Positions 5,839 to 59,257 of a stretch of DNA of 64,000 nt are shown one piece after another (position 1 is the first letter of the stretch; every line of letters starts with the position of its first letter). The position numbers were made by a program, and so were the translations under genes. The stretch spans positions 124,001 through 188,000 of the IMG/VR virus record IMGVR_UViG_3300035661_000001; one strand, given 5' to 3'. Below the pieces are notes generated by a model. It worked only from the letters and a program-made list of their open reading frames with translations. It was not told the DNA's origin and searched no databases.

Positions 5839-6273
5839 ATGTTAGTATGGATAACCACGACGGACTCATTAAAAGAATTTAAGAGATTTTTAAATTCTTT
5901 ACGATGCCCTTTGTGTAATTCTCAATTAGATGGAAATATCACATTACGTGAGGCTAGTTTATATTGCGTGGGCAATAATGATGAATATCGCGGTAAATGG
6001 ACTCCTAATTCTATATTTGCCCAGACGGAAACTATCAAATATTATTATAGCGATTTTGAGTATGATATTACGATTAATCAAATCGGAAATCAAATTGGAA
6101 ATCAATTTGTAACAAGAGTAATTCGTTATAATGCTGATGTATCTATCAAATATAAAAATTCAACCAGAAAAGAATTATTTGAATATACTGGGGCTAAATT
6201 AGGATTTTTCCGTAAAAGAATGGATCAAGATGTTTTCTTGAAGAAATTAAAAACATATCAGGTTTTTAAATGA
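5839..6273 (+). CDS. Zn-ribbon hypothetical protein with shared C-terminal motif
   Basis: LRCPLC; ends KLKTYQVFK. Confidence 0.7.
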   Translation: MLVWITTTDSLKEFKRFLNSLRCPLCNSQLDGNITLREASLYCVGNNDEYRGKWTPNSIFAQTETIKYYYSDFEYDITINQIGNQIGNQFVTRVIRYNADVSIKYKNSTRKELFEYTGAKLGFFRKRMDQDVFLKKLKTYQVFK

Positions 6274-6425: not shown

Positions 6426-6491
6426 ATGACACCTGAGTTAAAAAAACTATTAAATAGTCTCAGATGTCCAAATAGAAAAATGTTGACTTAA
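6426..6491 (+). pseudogene. truncated paralog of 5839..6273
   Basis: MTPELKKLLNSLRCP then stops; matches KRFLNSLRCPLC. Confidence 0.5.
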
Positions 6492-35430: not shown

Positions 35431-36645
35431 ATGGTAAAATTCAAAATGATAGGGAGAGATATAAACTCTTCTCCAACTCAATATAGAACATGGGTAGTTA
35501 ATGAAGAGCCTGATTTTACTGGATTACAATATTCAGGTTTAAAATCAGGTGATTCGCCTTTAATCAATATTGAGCCTTATCTTATTCCTGATGATTCAGT
35601 TGCAGATTTTAATCTTCCAGATCCATTACAATGGGAAACTACTTATAAAGTATTACCAAGTCCTGTCGCTAGTAGCCAAGTAGCTATTATTGATGGATAT
35701 GCTTATTTATTTGGTGGCAAGGTTTCTGGAAAAATATACAAAGCTTCCCTTAATAATCCGACATTTTGGGAAGATACCCAGGCGCAACTTCCATCACCAC
35801 TATATGGATCTCAATTAGTCATTATAGGCAGTTTTATCTATTTAATTGGTGGTAATGATAGCTCTGGTTCTACTAGCCATATTTATGGCGCTCATGTGGA
35901 CGATCCTTTAACTTGGTTGGATTTAGGACCCAAATTACCAACACCTGTACAAAATGCGCAAGCTATTATTGCCAATAACAATATTTATTTATTAGGAGGC
36001 AAATCAGATGCAAATACAGTTTTGGATAAAATCTATACGGCACCCGTATCAGATATTTTAAATTGGACAGATTTAGGGTCTCAACTACCTATACCTTTAC
36101 ATAATTCTCAGGTAGGAATTGTAGACGGATATGCTTATTTATTTGGAGGATCTAATACTGTTAATAGCTTGACTGATAGTATTTGTCGAGCATCTTTAAA
36201 TGATTTATTAAATTGGGATATTTCGGGATATTTACCTTATCAATCGGCAAATGGACAATTCATTATTGTCGGTGATAAAGGATATTTAATAACTCCTACT
36301 GACGGATATGGAATTGATGGTTATTCAGCCCCACCTTCTTCTGGGACGAAAATTTTTCAATGTAATTTACATGATCCAAACCAATGGATTGATACCGGGA
36401 AAATTGTTCCAGGTGAAATATCAGAATCACAAATAGCTATTATATATGATAGAATTTTTCTATTTGGTGGTAATGCTAGCACTGTAATTTTTGCCAGTAA
36501 CATTAAATACAAATATCTGTTAACAAATTTGACCGCTATTGAATATGGTTACGTTACTCGAACATTGGTAGAAAATGCTTCTTCCAAATTAGATTTATTT
36601 CAAATTTTAGGTTTCCCGCCGTGGAAAAGCGATTATGAACGATGA
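35431..36645 (+). CDS. Kelch-like beta-propeller protein
   Basis: Repeats of YL(F/I/L)GG....IY.A.....W...G..LP. Confidence 0.8.
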   Translation: MVKFKMIGRDINSSPTQYRTWVVNEEPDFTGLQYSGLKSGDSPLINIEPYLIPDDSVADFNLPDPLQWETTYKVLPSPVASSQVAIIDGYAYLFGGKVSGKIYKASLNNPTFWEDTQAQLPSPLYGSQLVIIGSFIYLIGGNDSSGSTSHIYGAHVDDPLTWLDLGPKLPTPVQNAQAIIANNNIYLLGGKSDANTVLDKIYTAPVSDILNWTDLGSQLPIPLHNSQVGIVDGYAYLFGGSNTVNSLTDSICRASLNDLLNWDISGYLPYQSANGQFIIVGDKGYLITPTDGYGIDGYSAPPSSGTKIFQCNLHDPNQWIDTGKIVPGEISESQIAIIYDRIFLFGGNASTVIFASNIKYKYLLTNLTAIEYGYVTRTLVENASSKLDLFQILGFPPWKSDYER

Positions 36646-36725: not shown

Positions 36726-37118
36726 ATGAGTAAGCAATGCCGCGTCTGTGATTTATCCAAAAGAGGTTTCCCTGAATATTACGGAAGCTGTGAAGAAATT
36801 ACGATAGATTTTAAATGCCTTATGTGTAAAGGTGTTAATAATGTTATACACCATGCTAATGACAGTGTTTTCACGGGTCAAATATTTGAATGTAATATTT
36901 GTCATAATTATATTCAATATTATGATGATGATGATATGCTTCTATATAAATATGAATTTTATTATGACGAATTATTAATTGTTAATGATTTTGAATCAAA
37001 ACAAACGCATATTTCTTTTGACCCTTTATACGAAGCAGTTATTACATTACCATTTATTGAATTTTCAGATAAAGATCGTTTCTTCAAGAAAATTAAATCC
37101 TTAATCATTTTTTCGTGA
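36726..37118 (+). CDS. Zn-ribbon hypothetical protein with shared C-terminal motif
   Basis: Three CxxC; LPFI..; ends KIKSLIIFS. Confidence 0.7.
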   Translation: MSKQCRVCDLSKRGFPEYYGSCEEITIDFKCLMCKGVNNVIHHANDSVFTGQIFECNICHNYIQYYDDDDMLLYKYEFYYDELLIVNDFESKQTHISFDPLYEAVITLPFIEFSDKDRFFKKIKSLIIFS

Positions 37119-46252: not shown

Positions 46253-46837
46253 ATGAATAATTTACAAGAAGTTTGGGAGCATTGTTTATTTTGTCCTCTA
46301 TGTCAAGACGTTTGTCGAGAGATGCATATGGCTCCTTTTTTAAAAGGAGCATTAATAGATAATATTAACAAACAAAATAATACTCTTGAATTTGATTGTC
46401 AAATCACTATAGTAAAAAAATCTTCCAAAAACATAAAAATTCATTATGTTATTGATCTAATTAATAATTCTTTTGAATCAAAAACACTTGATCCTAGTGA
46501 TGAGATGACAATAATTAATATGTCTGTAGGTATACAAGGCATATGTAAAAAATGTGAAGGCACTCTTTCCATATCTTCATCATTTGATATGGAAATCAAA
46601 TCTAAAACTATTTCAAATTTTGAAATAGCTAAAGATAGTGTAACTTTATTTGATGAAAATAATTATTATTGCATTACAGTTTTGAACTATTCAAAACAAT
46701 TATTAGTATCAAAATCATCTGATAAAGATTCTGGGCACTTCATTTCTGGAGCTATTATTCTGCCTTTTATAAATTTGGATTTTGCTAATCCAAAAGCTGT
46801 AATTTCAAAAATTAAAACTTTACTACTTTTTTCATAA
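46253..46837 (+). CDS. Zn-ribbon hypothetical protein with shared C-terminal motif
   Basis: CPLC, CKKC; LPFI; ends KIKTLLLFS. Confidence 0.72.
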   Translation: MNNLQEVWEHCLFCPLCQDVCREMHMAPFLKGALIDNINKQNNTLEFDCQITIVKKSSKNIKIHYVIDLINNSFESKTLDPSDEMTIINMSVGIQGICKKCEGTLSISSSFDMEIKSKTISNFEIAKDSVTLFDENNYYCITVLNYSKQLLVSKSSDKDSGHFISGAIILPFINLDFANPKAVISKIKTLLLFS

Positions 46838-48572: not shown

Positions 48573-48884
48573 ATGAAATGTAAATTTTGTACTTCAGAAC
48601 TTGAAGTTAAGCGTTTTCAATATGTAGATTATATGATATGTAGTCATCATAAACCCTCAAAAGTAGTATATAGATATGTAGCACCATATGGTGATAAATG
48701 GACTATTACTCATGGTGATTATAGTTTGTACTATAATAAAGGTAGAACACTTTTTCGAAAAATAAATGAAAAATCCGAAAAATCACAAGAATTTTATACG
48801 ATCATTAAAAGATTTGATCATGAATTAAATATTAAACCCGAAGATTTTGGTAAAAAAATACCAACATTATTAACATTTTTATGA
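48573..48884 (+). CDS. Zn-ribbon protein with shared C-terminal motif
   Basis: MKCKFC..C..H; IKPEDF; ends KIPTLLTFL. Confidence 0.72.
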   Translation: MKCKFCTSELEVKRFQYVDYMICSHHKPSKVVYRYVAPYGDKWTITHGDYSLYYNKGRTLFRKINEKSEKSQEFYTIIKRFDHELNIKPEDFGKKIPTLLTFL

Positions 48885-49174
48885 ATTGTAATTTTTGTAA
48901 AAGAGGTACTGTTCCTCATATTGTAAAAGTCAGTGGAGTATATAAAACATTTTATCAATGTTTTCGACATCCTAAATTAAGGGTTTCGTGGAAAACACCA
49001 GGAGTATTTGGAATCTCTAATGGTTCTTATAGAATAAGAAATGTTCCTGGTGGAAAATTCTATTTAGATAGATTACTGCCTAGTTTAAAAGTGTTAATGA
49101 GATTAGAAAGTGATCCTAAAGTAACACCTGAGAATTTTGAAAAGAAATTGAAAGTTCTACTGGCATTTTCGTGA
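48881..49174 (+). CDS. Zn-ribbon protein with shared C-terminal motif
   Basis: MNCNFC..C..H; VTPENF; ends KLKVLLAFS. Confidence 0.72.
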   Translation: MNCNFCKRGTVPHIVKVSGVYKTFYQCFRHPKLRVSWKTPGVFGISNGSYRIRNVPGGKFYLDRLLPSLKVLMRLESDPKVTPENFEKKLKVLLAFS

Positions 49175-49594
49175 GGCGTTTATATGAATGAATTTTTAAT
49201 TAAAATAGATGGACAAGTACCAATTCTTTGCAAAGCAGATAAATTAAAATCTACAGTATTGGAGTTACGTAAAATTCATGAACAAAAAAATATTCATTGT
49301 TATGAATTAGGTGAAAAGCATTTGATTCGAGATATACTGTGGTTTAGGAATACGCCATGATTATTTTTATACTTGTGTTCATATTAACAACAGTATGTTT
49401 TCAATTTATATCATATCATTTAAAATCCAAAAGGAACTTAAGATTAATATTTTCTGACTGGAATGCTACATTGGAATTGTGGGGAGGTTTAAATAAATTA
49501 CTAGCTGCTAAATCTAAAGTTGATGTTGATTCTTTATATGAAGAAGCATTGAGAAACATATGTGTTCAAGAAAAAATTCAAAGAGTAGCTTGTA

Positions 49595-49918
49595 ATGAAA
49601 AATAATTTTAAATGTACTTTTTGTAATAAAGCATGTAAGTTTTCTAAAAGAAAGAAAAAGCATTATTGCAATAACCATTTAATTATAGTATGTTATACTA
49701 TATAATATGGCGATCCCAAAGAAGTAAATTATTATGAATTAATATCTGATGAATTTCGCGCTGTAATAACAGATCATGAATATCAACAATATACAAGTAT
49801 ATTTAATGAAAATATTTCTGATGTCAAATATAAAAAAATATTTACCTTGCCATATGTCGTAAATATTACTCCTGACAATTTTAAAGAAAAAATCAAAACA
49901 CTAATAACATTTAGCTGA
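49595..49918 (+). pseudogene. Zn-ribbon paralog with shared C-terminal motif and in-frame TAA at 49703
   Basis: MKNNFKCTFC..C..H..*..ITPDNFKEKIKTLITFS in a single frame. Confidence 0.65.
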
Positions 49919-50394
49919 AATATTATGGAATATAAATTTATAATTGAAAACAAAGGATCAATTACTTTAATTTCTGATTTGAAAGAATTAAAAAATACGA
50001 TAATTGAATTGAAAAAATCTAATGATTTAAAAGATATTATATGTCATGAAGTGGGTAAAAGAATTTTAATTAGAGAATTATTTTAAAATGAAATTTACAA
50101 ACAGTATATTGATAATAAATGATAATTTATCATATAATAATGTTGATGGTAATTACTCTAATAATTCTAAAACAATTATAAGTAAAACATTAAATAAAGG
50201 TTTTGCAGGAGTTACGCCACCTTTTAATAATATAAAATTTAATATTGATATACAATTATTAGTTGACGATAAATTTGAAATTTTTGATTCAAATAATCTA
50301 TTAATTATTAGTGGGAAAATTAAACAAATAATGCCTCGTAATTCTTATTTATTTGCGAGAGTACACAGCCCAGATAATCTATGAATAATATTGA

Positions 50395-51108
50395 ATGGAT
50401 AATATGAAATTATCAATTCAAGAAATAATCAAAATTTATCATGAAGTTAAAAGTATTCGTAAAACTGCAACATTATCTGGATATTCCAAATCTGGTGTGG
50501 AATATTTATTAAAGAAAAATAATATAAAATTATTTTCAAAAAATAGAAATGGTGATGAAAATTCTTCGCGCAAAGCAATTGAAAATTTAAATATTAATGA
50601 TCCAAGAAAATTAGTGCGTGATCCAATATATATGTTTGAGCTTTATGTTCAGAATAAAATGTCTATACCTGAAATAGCTAATAAATTACAAATAAGTAAT
50701 ACGACAGTAATTACTGGTTTAAATCAATGTGGCATAAAAAGAAGATCTAAAAAAGAAGCTTTAAAAGGTAAGTCGCGTCCAAATGTACAAGGTTCAAAAA
50801 ATATAAATTGGAGAGGCGGCATTACTGGTTGGCGTAAATTGGCACGAGGCAGATTAAATGAACATTTTGTAAAACCTATTATGGAAAGAGATAATTTTAA
50901 TTGCCAATGGTGTTTTTCTAAAAAAAATATAGTAGTACATCATCATGTAAGATCATTTATGGAAATTGTAAATATTGTTCGTCAACGCATTAATGAATTA
51001 AATATTGAAGATTTTGTAAATGAAATAGTTAAAGAGCATAAATTAAAAGACGGCATTACAATTTGTAAAATTTGCCATGATAATTTTCATAAGGAACATG
51101 GAAAATGA
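50395..51108 (+). CDS. HTH-containing HNH endonuclease
   Basis: NWRGG; RDNFNCQWC..VHHH..GITICKICH..FH. Confidence 0.8.
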   Translation: MDNMKLSIQEIIKIYHEVKSIRKTATLSGYSKSGVEYLLKKNNIKLFSKNRNGDENSSRKAIENLNINDPRKLVRDPIYMFELYVQNKMSIPEIANKLQISNTTVITGLNQCGIKRRSKKEALKGKSRPNVQGSKNINWRGGITGWRKLARGRLNEHFVKPIMERDNFNCQWCFSKKNIVVHHHVRSFMEIVNIVRQRINELNIEDFVNEIVKEHKLKDGITICKICHDNFHKEHGK

Positions 51109-58819: not shown

Positions 58820-59257
58820 ATGAAAAGTGATAAATATCAAATTTACAAAGAGCCTGTTTCCGATATAGAAGAATATTTATTACTTGTCGCATTATTTGTA
58901 ACAGATCCTAAAATGAATCCTAACCAGGATTTAGATTTTTTCGTAGAATTAATATTTGATAGTAAATGGGGTCATATCCACACTAGGTTTTGTCGGTACT
59001 TTTTAGTAAAAAATGAAGATTATCTTTTTACATTTGAAGCTATTTCTAAATTTTTAGAATTTTTATCTGTAGATTCAATTTTATTTACTAATGATTTTTT
59101 CCATACCTTGTGTTCAGATTACCCTTCTGTTATGGTTGAAAAGGTATTTAATAATTTACCAAATTATTTGAAACATCAATCATTAGAAGTTCTTGTTAAA
59201 TACGACAAAATAGTAAATGAAATTCCAAGAATTAAAACTTACATGGTATTTTCATGA
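58820..59257 (+). CDS. hypothetical protein with shared C-terminal motif
   Basis: ends RIKTYMVFS. Confidence 0.7.
   Translation: MKSDKYQIYKEPVSDIEEYLLLVALFVTDPKMNPNQDLDFFVELIFDSKWGHIHTRFCRYFLVKNEDYLFTFEAISKFLEFLSVDSILFTNDFFHTLCSDYPSVMVEKVFNNLPNYLKHQSLEVLVKYDKIVNEIPRIKTYMVFS

What the first reader, a model, noticed from the sequence alone, without database searches (positions are those of the whole stretch)
48573..49918. Expanding Zn-ribbon family carrying the C-terminal tag
Three nearby ORFs (48573, 48881 and pseudogene 49595) share N-terminal CxFC..C..H, a variable middle and the ending [IV][KT]P[ED][ND]F-x-x-K-[IL]-x-x-L-x-x-F-[SL]. Genes 36726 and 46253 share CxxC pairs and LPFI before the same tail. 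Gene 5839 has CPLC and a truncated copy at 6426. Conserved ends around a hypervariable core suggest a modular adaptor family that diversifies to bind different targets (inference).
Basis: partly seen in the sequence, partly recalled or inferred. Interest (0 to 1): 0.6.

Follow-up and report, generated by a model that had tools for sequence, protein, structure and literature searches.

The report
Zinc-knuckle protein family in huge phages
The ORFs belong to a real, previously undescribed family of small zinc-binding proteins that huge phages carry in 10 to 25 diverged copies, and the shared "C-terminal tag" is the family's last helix; what the proteins do is still unknown.

Summary
The window lies in a complete 452-kb phage genome found in microbial-mat and sediment metagenomes. 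ORFs 48573, 48881, 49595 (one in-frame TAA), 36726, 46253 and 5839 all match one profile.

A search of 1.84 billion proteins found 276 cluster representatives. All are unnamed and about 100-150 aa. They have an invariant N-terminal CxxC (mostly CPxC), a third invariant Cys followed by His or Cys, and a strongly conserved ending, LP[FY]FEPDFS[DN]Y.KL..K[IL]KTYL.FS, that always closes the protein. No Pfam, PHROG or NCBIfam family matches, and no bacterial genome carries it.

With the deep alignment AlphaFold2 gives a confident model (pLDDT 94): zinc knuckle, antiparallel beta-meander, C-terminal amphipathic helix. It has no convincing PDB counterpart (Z 5.4 or less). So the "tag" is part of the fold, not an appended peptide. 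One unrelated 145-aa protein (58820) does carry the last nine residues.

The ends are more conserved than the middle. However, the duplications are old, orthologs are under purifying selection along their whole length, one copy here is decaying, and this phage's main array (5-6 copies) is smaller than relatives' (19-24). "Expanding" and "hypervariable" are therefore overstated. The adaptor idea remains an inference.

The parts
48573..48884 (+). Family member, 103 aa. Zn knuckle C3/C6/C23 plus H25/26, beta-meander, C-terminal helix 89-101.
   Evidence: Profile E 1.9e-12. AF2 pLDDT 94.2, pTM 0.85. Ortholog in L003 10001-10312 is 69% identical.
48881..49174 (+). Family member, 97 aa. Its start overlaps the previous stop (ATGA).
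   Evidence: Profile E 2.8e-8. Ortholog L003 10309-10602 is 62% identical, dN/dS 0.19.
49595..49918 (+). Family member broken by one in-frame TAA (49703-49705); otherwise a full-length 107-codon frame.
   Evidence: Profile match over positions 4-114 with 1 TAA, E 1.3e-12. Read with X at the stop it aligns end to end with the intact 107-aa gene L003 10599-10922 at 32% identity. The stop is reproduced in L004 and run X4.
46253..46837 (+). Two-module member, 194 aa: an N-terminal partial copy of the domain plus a complete C-terminal copy with LPFI and the tail.
   Evidence: Profile positions 11-45 at residues 14-68 and 26-114 at the C-terminal half, E 9e-10. Ortholog L003 7788-8366 is 60% identical.
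36726..37118 (+). Family member, 130 aa, with three CxxC pairs, LPFI and the tail. Lies between a Kelch-repeat gene and the NAD-dependent DNA ligase gene.
   Evidence: Profile E 1.1e-7. AF2 model pLDDT 71.7 with the same sheet-plus-helix architecture.
5839..6273 (+). Family member, 144 aa, with CPLC and tail ending VFK.
   Evidence: Profile E 2.8e-5 and 1e-6. External relative P0059 of 151 aa.
6426..6491 (+). Relic of an N-terminal fragment of a 5839-type copy (21 codons).
   Evidence: tblastn finds 9 of 12 residues identical, E 1.3e-4 in a 367-nt search space; nothing else of a copy remains. The codons differ at synonymous sites.
58820..59257 (+). Unrelated 145-aa protein that ends with the family's last nine residues (RIKTYMVFS).
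   Evidence: Tail HMM E 0.03-0.13, match anchored at the stop. The L003 ortholog keeps RIKTFMIFS. hhalign against the family gives probability 22%, tail only.
49184..49360 (+). 58-aa ORF directly after member 48881; paralog of 49925-50086.
   Evidence: blastp 35% identity over 49 aa, E 1.8e-7 genome-wide.
49925..50086 (+). 53-aa ORF directly after the broken member; paralog of 49184-49360.

Best explanation
Shown: these ORFs are copies of an undescribed protein family so far seen only in viral and metagenome contigs. Each copy is one compact domain of about 100-130 aa. It has an N-terminal zinc knuckle (CPxC, then Cys, then His or Cys), an antiparallel beta-meander, and a C-terminal amphipathic helix that always terminates the protein. 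The "C-terminal tag" is that helix together with the loop before it (LP[FY]FEPDFS). In the model it is packed into the domain. The family was multiplied long ago in a clade that includes phages of about 450-480 kb and is kept as tandem, start/stop-overlapping arrays plus scattered single genes. Copies are gained, lost and broken in individual lineages.

Inferred: the copies act as a battery of soluble binding proteins. The zinc knuckle and terminal helix provide the common scaffold and probably a common contact face. That face would include the conserved polar residues K-9, K-7, T-6 and S-1 and the FEPD loop. The divergent sheet surface and loops would give each copy a different target, most plausibly host or defence proteins during takeover.
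For: Family and tail:
- 276 representatives at E <= 1e-3, each covering nearly the whole profile and ending at the C-terminus.
- Tail statistics: K-9 in 145 of 148, F-2 in 142 of 148.
- An external-only tail HMM recovers the genome's copies.
- Conservation is at protein level, not DNA level. Third codon positions are 44% identical against 59% for positions 1 and 2, and Ser is encoded by both TCN and AGC.

Fold:
- pLDDT 94.2, pTM 0.85, with the helix at pLDDT 91-97.
- The same architecture appears for a paralog.
- BFVD returns only other uncharacterized proteins of uncultured Caudovirales phages, TM up to 0.77.

Copy numbers: 11 in this genome and 21, 22, 8 and 9 in four related records. Arrays reach 19-24 tandem copies.

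Old duplications and purifying selection.

Variable body: net charge of whole proteins ranges from -9 to +10; the body (tail removed) has median 0 and the tail median +3.

Not cellular: no hit in 185,579 prokaryote species genomes.
Against: - No partner, expression data or activity is known. No RNA run holds the locus.
- The conserved polar tail residues could be purely structural, for example a salt bridge to the FEPD loop. I had no model coordinates to check this.
- One unrelated protein carries the last nine residues, which a pure fold-element view does not explain.
- The orthologous middles are not under detectable diversifying selection, but only one genome pair was tested.
Confidence: 0.5

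Rival explanations
1. The last nine or so residues ([KR][IL]KT[YL]..FS-COOH) are a portable address label read by a machine. It could be a C-terminal degron or tether for a Clp-type protease, or a signal that loads the proteins into the capsid for co-injection. The role would be analogous to the capsid-targeting sequence of T4 internal proteins.
For: - The motif is anchored 0-1 residue from the free C-terminus in every member.
- Polar positions are conserved.
- The same ending sits on an unrelated 145-aa protein and its ortholog. By my own rough estimate from residue frequencies, the chance of such an ending is about 1e-6 per genome.
- The phage encodes two tandem cellular-type ClpP-like genes (157 bits against ClpP but only 48 bits against head-maturation protease).
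- The tail is basic then hydrophobic, like MuA-type ClpX motifs (from my own knowledge).
Against: - AF2 places the tail as a confidently packed helix, not a free peptide.
- No PDZ, S41 or ClpB-D2-small type domain was found in the genome.
- No virion or degradation data exist.
- The two further tail-like proteins (L001 3624-4157 and 4164-4658) are not significant with the external HMM.
Confidence: 0.2
2. They are nucleic-acid-binding regulators: zinc-ribbon transcription or translation factors, each copy controlling a different gene set. The main array lies beside a phage release-factor-2-like gene.
For: - Zinc knuckle, and a tail with median net charge +3.
- The main array directly follows the RF2-like gene in this phage and in a 480-kb relative.
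- The family's median pI is 8.4.
Against: - Body charge ranges from strongly acidic to strongly basic.
- No match to any DNA- or RNA-binding fold or family.
- Adjacency to RF2 is the only link to translation.
Confidence: 0.12
3. The tail is a sliding-clamp-binding peptide, and the family tethers different cargos to the replisome.
For: It is a hydrophobic or aromatic motif at the extreme C-terminus, as in Pol II, Pol IV and T4 gp43 (from my own knowledge). Several copies sit among replication and repair genes.
Against: - The motif does not fit QL[SD]LF or the PIP box.
- No DnaN N- or C-terminal domain and no gp45-type clamp domain was detected in the genome.
- The tail is modelled as a packed helix.
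Confidence: 0.03
4. The similarity is chance, low-complexity or a DNA-level signal, and the ORFs are not a protein family.
For: Pairwise BLAST between paralogs is weak. The genome is AT-rich.
Against: - Profile E-values reach 1e-26.
- There are 276 external homologs.
- Orthologs have dN/dS below 1.
- Synonymous sites in the tail vary.
- The fold is predicted confidently.
Confidence: 0.01

Closest known systems
Zinc-ribbon / zinc-knuckle small proteins (e.g. Pfam Trm112p-like, DUF2089 zinc ribbon)
   Same: N-terminal CPxC knuckle followed by a second Cys/His pair on a beta-hairpin; small size.
   Different: Only sub-threshold hits restricted to the CPxC stretch (E 0.03-0.2, below the gathering score). 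The rest of the domain and the tail have no counterpart.
Mam33 / p32 / gC1qR fold (antiparallel sheet crossed by a C-terminal helix)
   Same: A run of antiparallel strands with a C-terminal helix. Best structural alignments cover 79-80 of 103 residues.
   Different: Z is only 4.9-5.0 (rmsd 3.5-4.2 A), below the level the tool itself calls noise (7-8). The family has no N-terminal helix, no uniform acidity, and has zinc ligands.
T4 internal proteins (IPI-III) with a shared capsid-targeting sequence
   Same: Small phage proteins in a variable multi-gene locus that share a short conserved terminal sequence on different bodies. This analogy comes from my own knowledge.
   Different: The T4 signal is N-terminal and is cleaved by the prohead protease. 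Here the motif is C-terminal and modelled as part of the fold, and packaging is untested.
Substrate-adaptor families with a conserved docking module (F-box proteins; SspB-type ClpX adaptors with a C-terminal tether)
   Different: No sequence or fold relation. No docking partner has been identified. The tail is not on a flexible linker.

Membership tests
Curated protein families (Pfam-A, PHROGs v4, NCBIfam not scanned for family members) | Score above the family's curated cut-off or a significant E-value | tested here: not met
   16 family members were scanned against Pfam and PHROGs. The best hits are E 0.002-0.3 and all below cut-off. A PDB sequence profile search gives a best E of 0.17. The ESM Atlas feature score is 0.76, a lead only.
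Zinc ribbon (structural class) | Four Cys/His ligands arranged as two knuckles on beta-hairpins | tested here: met
   C3, C6 and C23 are invariant in 149 of 149 sequences. A His or Cys follows the third Cys within 1-7 residues in 143 of 148. The model puts them on hairpins.
Zinc ribbon (structural class) | Actual zinc binding | not testable with these tools
   Needs metal analysis of purified protein.
Mam33/p32 fold | Structural alignment clearly above background over the whole domain | tested here: inconclusive
   VIA-align Z 5.0 (79 aligned residues, rmsd 4.2) and Z 4.9 (80 aligned, rmsd 3.5). Foldseek E 0.4.
Beta-clamp / gp45-clamp binding proteins | QL[SD]LF-type or PIP-type motif, and a clamp to bind | tested here: not met
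   The tail consensus K[IL]KTYL.FS does not fit. No PF00712, PF02768 or PF02916 match in the genome.
T4-type internal proteins | N-terminal capsid-targeting sequence cleaved by the prohead protease; presence in virions | tested here: not met
   The conserved element is C-terminal and the N-terminus is the zinc knuckle. Virion presence is not testable here.
Homo-oligomeric assembly | Predicted dimer interface above controls | tested here: inconclusive
   Complex prediction with 2 copies gave ipSAE 0.03-0.04 and verdict 'no answer'.

The most novel reading that the evidence does not exclude
The C-terminal nonapeptide is a portable address label that a phage or host machine reads, such as a Clp-type protease or the capsid-loading apparatus. 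It would turn 10-25 diverged zinc-knuckle proteins, plus at least one unrelated protein, into a co-regulated or co-injected effector battery. That would be a C-terminal counterpart of the T4 capsid-targeting sequence in huge phages.
Probability: 0.17. Interest if true: 0.75.

Novelty: new variant of a known kind. Interest (0 to 1): 0.45.

Why it matters
Huge phages devote much of their genomes to genes of unknown function. This is a family found only in viral and metagenome contigs, with hundreds of sequence clusters and up to about two dozen tandem copies per genome. It has a confidently predicted fold with no clear solved counterpart, and a C-terminal signature conserved far more strongly than the rest of the protein.

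That combination usually marks proteins that share one partner while diversifying against many targets, as in host takeover or counter-defence. The family is small, soluble-looking and easy to express, so the question can be tested directly. If the terminal motif proved to be a sorting or turnover label, it would reveal a new way large phages organise sets of effectors.

Tried and rejected
- Megablast and tblastn against the phage collection found no match.
It worked with the closer set A5.
- Cross-cluster HMMs built from five copies each detect the other cluster only weakly, E 0.04-0.4. The deep external profile was needed.
- Foldseek against PDB, VIA-align wide and ESM Atlas gave no convincing match for either model.
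- The homodimer prediction returned "no answer" and is not evidence either way.
- The clamp-binding idea was rejected.
- A search for a C-terminus-reading domain (PDZ_2, peptidase S41, ClpB D2-small) found nothing.
- Recoding as an explanation for the in-frame stop was rejected. The stop is TAA, whereas the phage's suppressor-like tRNA has anticodon CUA, which reads TAG. Code 11 already gives 89% ORF coverage. No other genetic code was used.
- A DNA-level or gene-conversion explanation of the tail was rejected.
- Two literature searches found nothing on this family.
- The two further tail-like proteins outside the window (L001 3624-4157 and 4164-4658) are paralogs of each other (E 4e-10). They are not significant with the external tail HMM, so I do not count them.

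Full report
**Setting.** The window is bases 124001-188000 of a single 451,956-bp virus record. The record has direct terminal repeats and is rated 100% complete. GC content is 36.5% and it carries 41 tRNA genes. The window encodes MetRS, EF-Ts, NAMPT, a UvrD helicase and an NAD-dependent ligase. This is a huge phage. Near-identical DNA occurs in microbial-mat and sediment metagenomes, and no RNA run holds it. The standard bacterial code fits, with 89% ORF coverage.

**The observation.**
- 48573-48884 and 48881-49174 overlap by ATGA.
- 49595-49918 is one frame of 107 codons with a single TAA at 49703-49705.
- That stop is identical in an independent IMG/VR contig and in a contig from another sediment study, so it is not an assembly slip.
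- With X at the stop, the frame aligns end to end with an intact 107-aa gene at the same position in a related contig.
- 6426-6491 keeps only 12 recognisable residues of a 5839-type N-terminus.

**Is it one family?**
- Pairwise BLAST between paralogs is weak (E 0.004-0.6), although nearly every top hit is another member.
- A profile of 14 copies searched against 1.84 billion representatives returned 276 proteins at E <= 1e-3. The 150 listed are 96-194 aa long and cover nearly the whole profile up to their last residue.
- They share an invariant N-terminal CxxC (Pro after the first Cys in 109 of 149), a third invariant Cys followed by His or Cys, a conserved Trp in the sheet, and the ending LP[FY]FEPDFS[DN]Y.KL..K[IL]KTYL.FS.
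- A tail HMM built only from foreign sequences recovers 10 ORFs here, and each match ends 0-1 residue from the stop.
- Codons in the tail differ freely at synonymous sites, so the constraint acts on the protein.
- None of Pfam, PHROGs, PDB sequences or the ESM Atlas knows the family.
- A pattern scan of 185,579 prokaryote genomes found none.
- UniProt holds members only as uncharacterized proteins of uncultured Caudovirales phages.

**Structure.**
- With the deep alignment, AlphaFold2 models the 103-aa protein at pLDDT 94.2 and pTM 0.85.
- The model has two short hairpins carrying the zinc ligands, five further antiparallel strands, and a helix at residues 89-101.
- A shallower model of the 130-aa paralog shows the same sheet and terminal helix.
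- The tail is therefore a confidently placed element of the domain.
- On a helical wheel (my own calculation), L-12, I-8, Y-5 and L-4 form the buried face. K-9, T-6 and F-2 form a second conserved stripe. That second stripe, together with the conserved FEPD loop, is why I suspect a functional face. I could not inspect coordinates to check it.
- Fold searches gave nothing convincing. Foldseek against PDB gave E >= 0.26. VIA-align gave Z <= 5.4, with Mam33/p32 at Z 4.9-5.0.

**Evolution.**
- Column conservation is 1.42 bits for the N-terminal 28 residues, 0.77 for the middle, 2.0 for the last 29 residues and 2.8 for the last 12. The "conserved ends, variable middle" pattern is real across paralogs.
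- Between orthologs in a related 240-kb contig (L003), identity is 60-69%. The middle is 56-64% identical with dN/dS of about 0.27-0.6, much like neighbouring genes.
- For 63 of 78 copies from six records the best partner lies in another phage, often at the same array position. Most duplications therefore predate these phages.
- Copy number varies. This genome has 11 profile hits: six in the window and a cluster of 5-6 directly after an RF2-like gene at genome 408-410 kb. Relatives carry 19-24 tandem copies at that site.
- This genome shows decay (one nonsense copy, one relic) rather than expansion.

**The tag outside the family.**
- A 145-aa protein (58820-59257) ends RIKTYMVFS and its ortholog ends RIKTFMIFS.
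- The rest of that protein shows no detectable relation to the family.
- This single case keeps alive the idea that the last nine residues work as a portable signal.
- As a possible reader of such a signal, I note two tandem cellular-type ClpP-like genes in the phage. No PDZ, S41 or Clp-ATPase small domain was found.

**Mechanism.**
- Shown: a family seen only in viral and metagenome contigs, anciently multiplied, single-domain and zinc-knuckle-bearing. Its C-terminal helix and preceding loop are its most constrained part.
- Inferred: a battery of binders with a common scaffold or contact face and copy-specific surfaces, probably used against host or defence targets.
- Rivals: a portable degron or packaging label, nucleic-acid-binding regulators, and clamp tethers.
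- A homodimer prediction gave no verdict.

**Verdict.** The finding is real and the family is new to the databases searched. "Expanding", "hypervariable" and "tag" each need toning down, and the function is open.

Noticed in passing
window 49184-49360 and 49925-50086: Two small ORFs (58 and 53 aa) are paralogs (35% identity, E 1.8e-7). Each lies directly after a family member, so a two-gene unit seems to have been duplicated. Both are absent from the syntenic stretch of relative L003, where the three family copies abut.
   Followed up: partly
genome 407194-408282 (L002 3194-4282), outside the window: A release-factor-2-like gene (362 aa, GGQ motif) sits immediately upstream of the main family array. 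The same arrangement occurs in a 480-kb relative (PCRF and RF-1 domains). A secreted-looking trypsin-like protease gene closes the array on the opposite strand in both.
   Followed up: partly
genome 80119-80195, outside the window: There is a tRNA with anticodon CUA (amber-suppressor type; ARAGORN calls it Pyl). TAG is the rarest stop (21 of 341 long ORFs). Reading TAG through adds little ORF coverage, so the standard code fits.
   Followed up: partly
genome 217515-218048 and 218129-218653 (L012, L013), outside the window: Two tandem ClpP-like genes score far better against cellular ClpP (157 bits) than against phage head-maturation proteases (48 bits). The second match contains one in-frame TGA.
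   Followed up: partly
window 50395-51108: A 237-aa ORF with an HNH-type ending (CKICHDNFH) and helix-turn-helix-like repeats, probably a homing endonuclease. It lies in a stretch (about 49180-51100) that is rearranged relative to L003.
   Followed up: no
window 35431-36645: A Kelch-repeat beta-propeller protein (404 aa) encoded by a phage, directly upstream of family member 36726.
   Followed up: no
window 49299-49375: One 151-nt contig of run X1 (depth 2.7) differs from the window by 13 changes, all G>A. It may be a damaged or hypermutated molecule, or an assembly artefact.
   Followed up: no
window 46253-46837 and L002 4269-4838: The roughly 190-aa members are two-module proteins (a partial domain plus a complete domain). 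Relatives keep orthologous ~200-aa forms just upstream of the array.
   Followed up: partly
L001 3624-4157 and 4164-4658 (genome 197624-198658): Two adjacent paralogs (24% identity, E 4e-10) without zinc ligands end RLKKLLIFT and KLKKLLIFA. These resemble the family tail but are not significant with the external tail HMM.
   Followed up: partly
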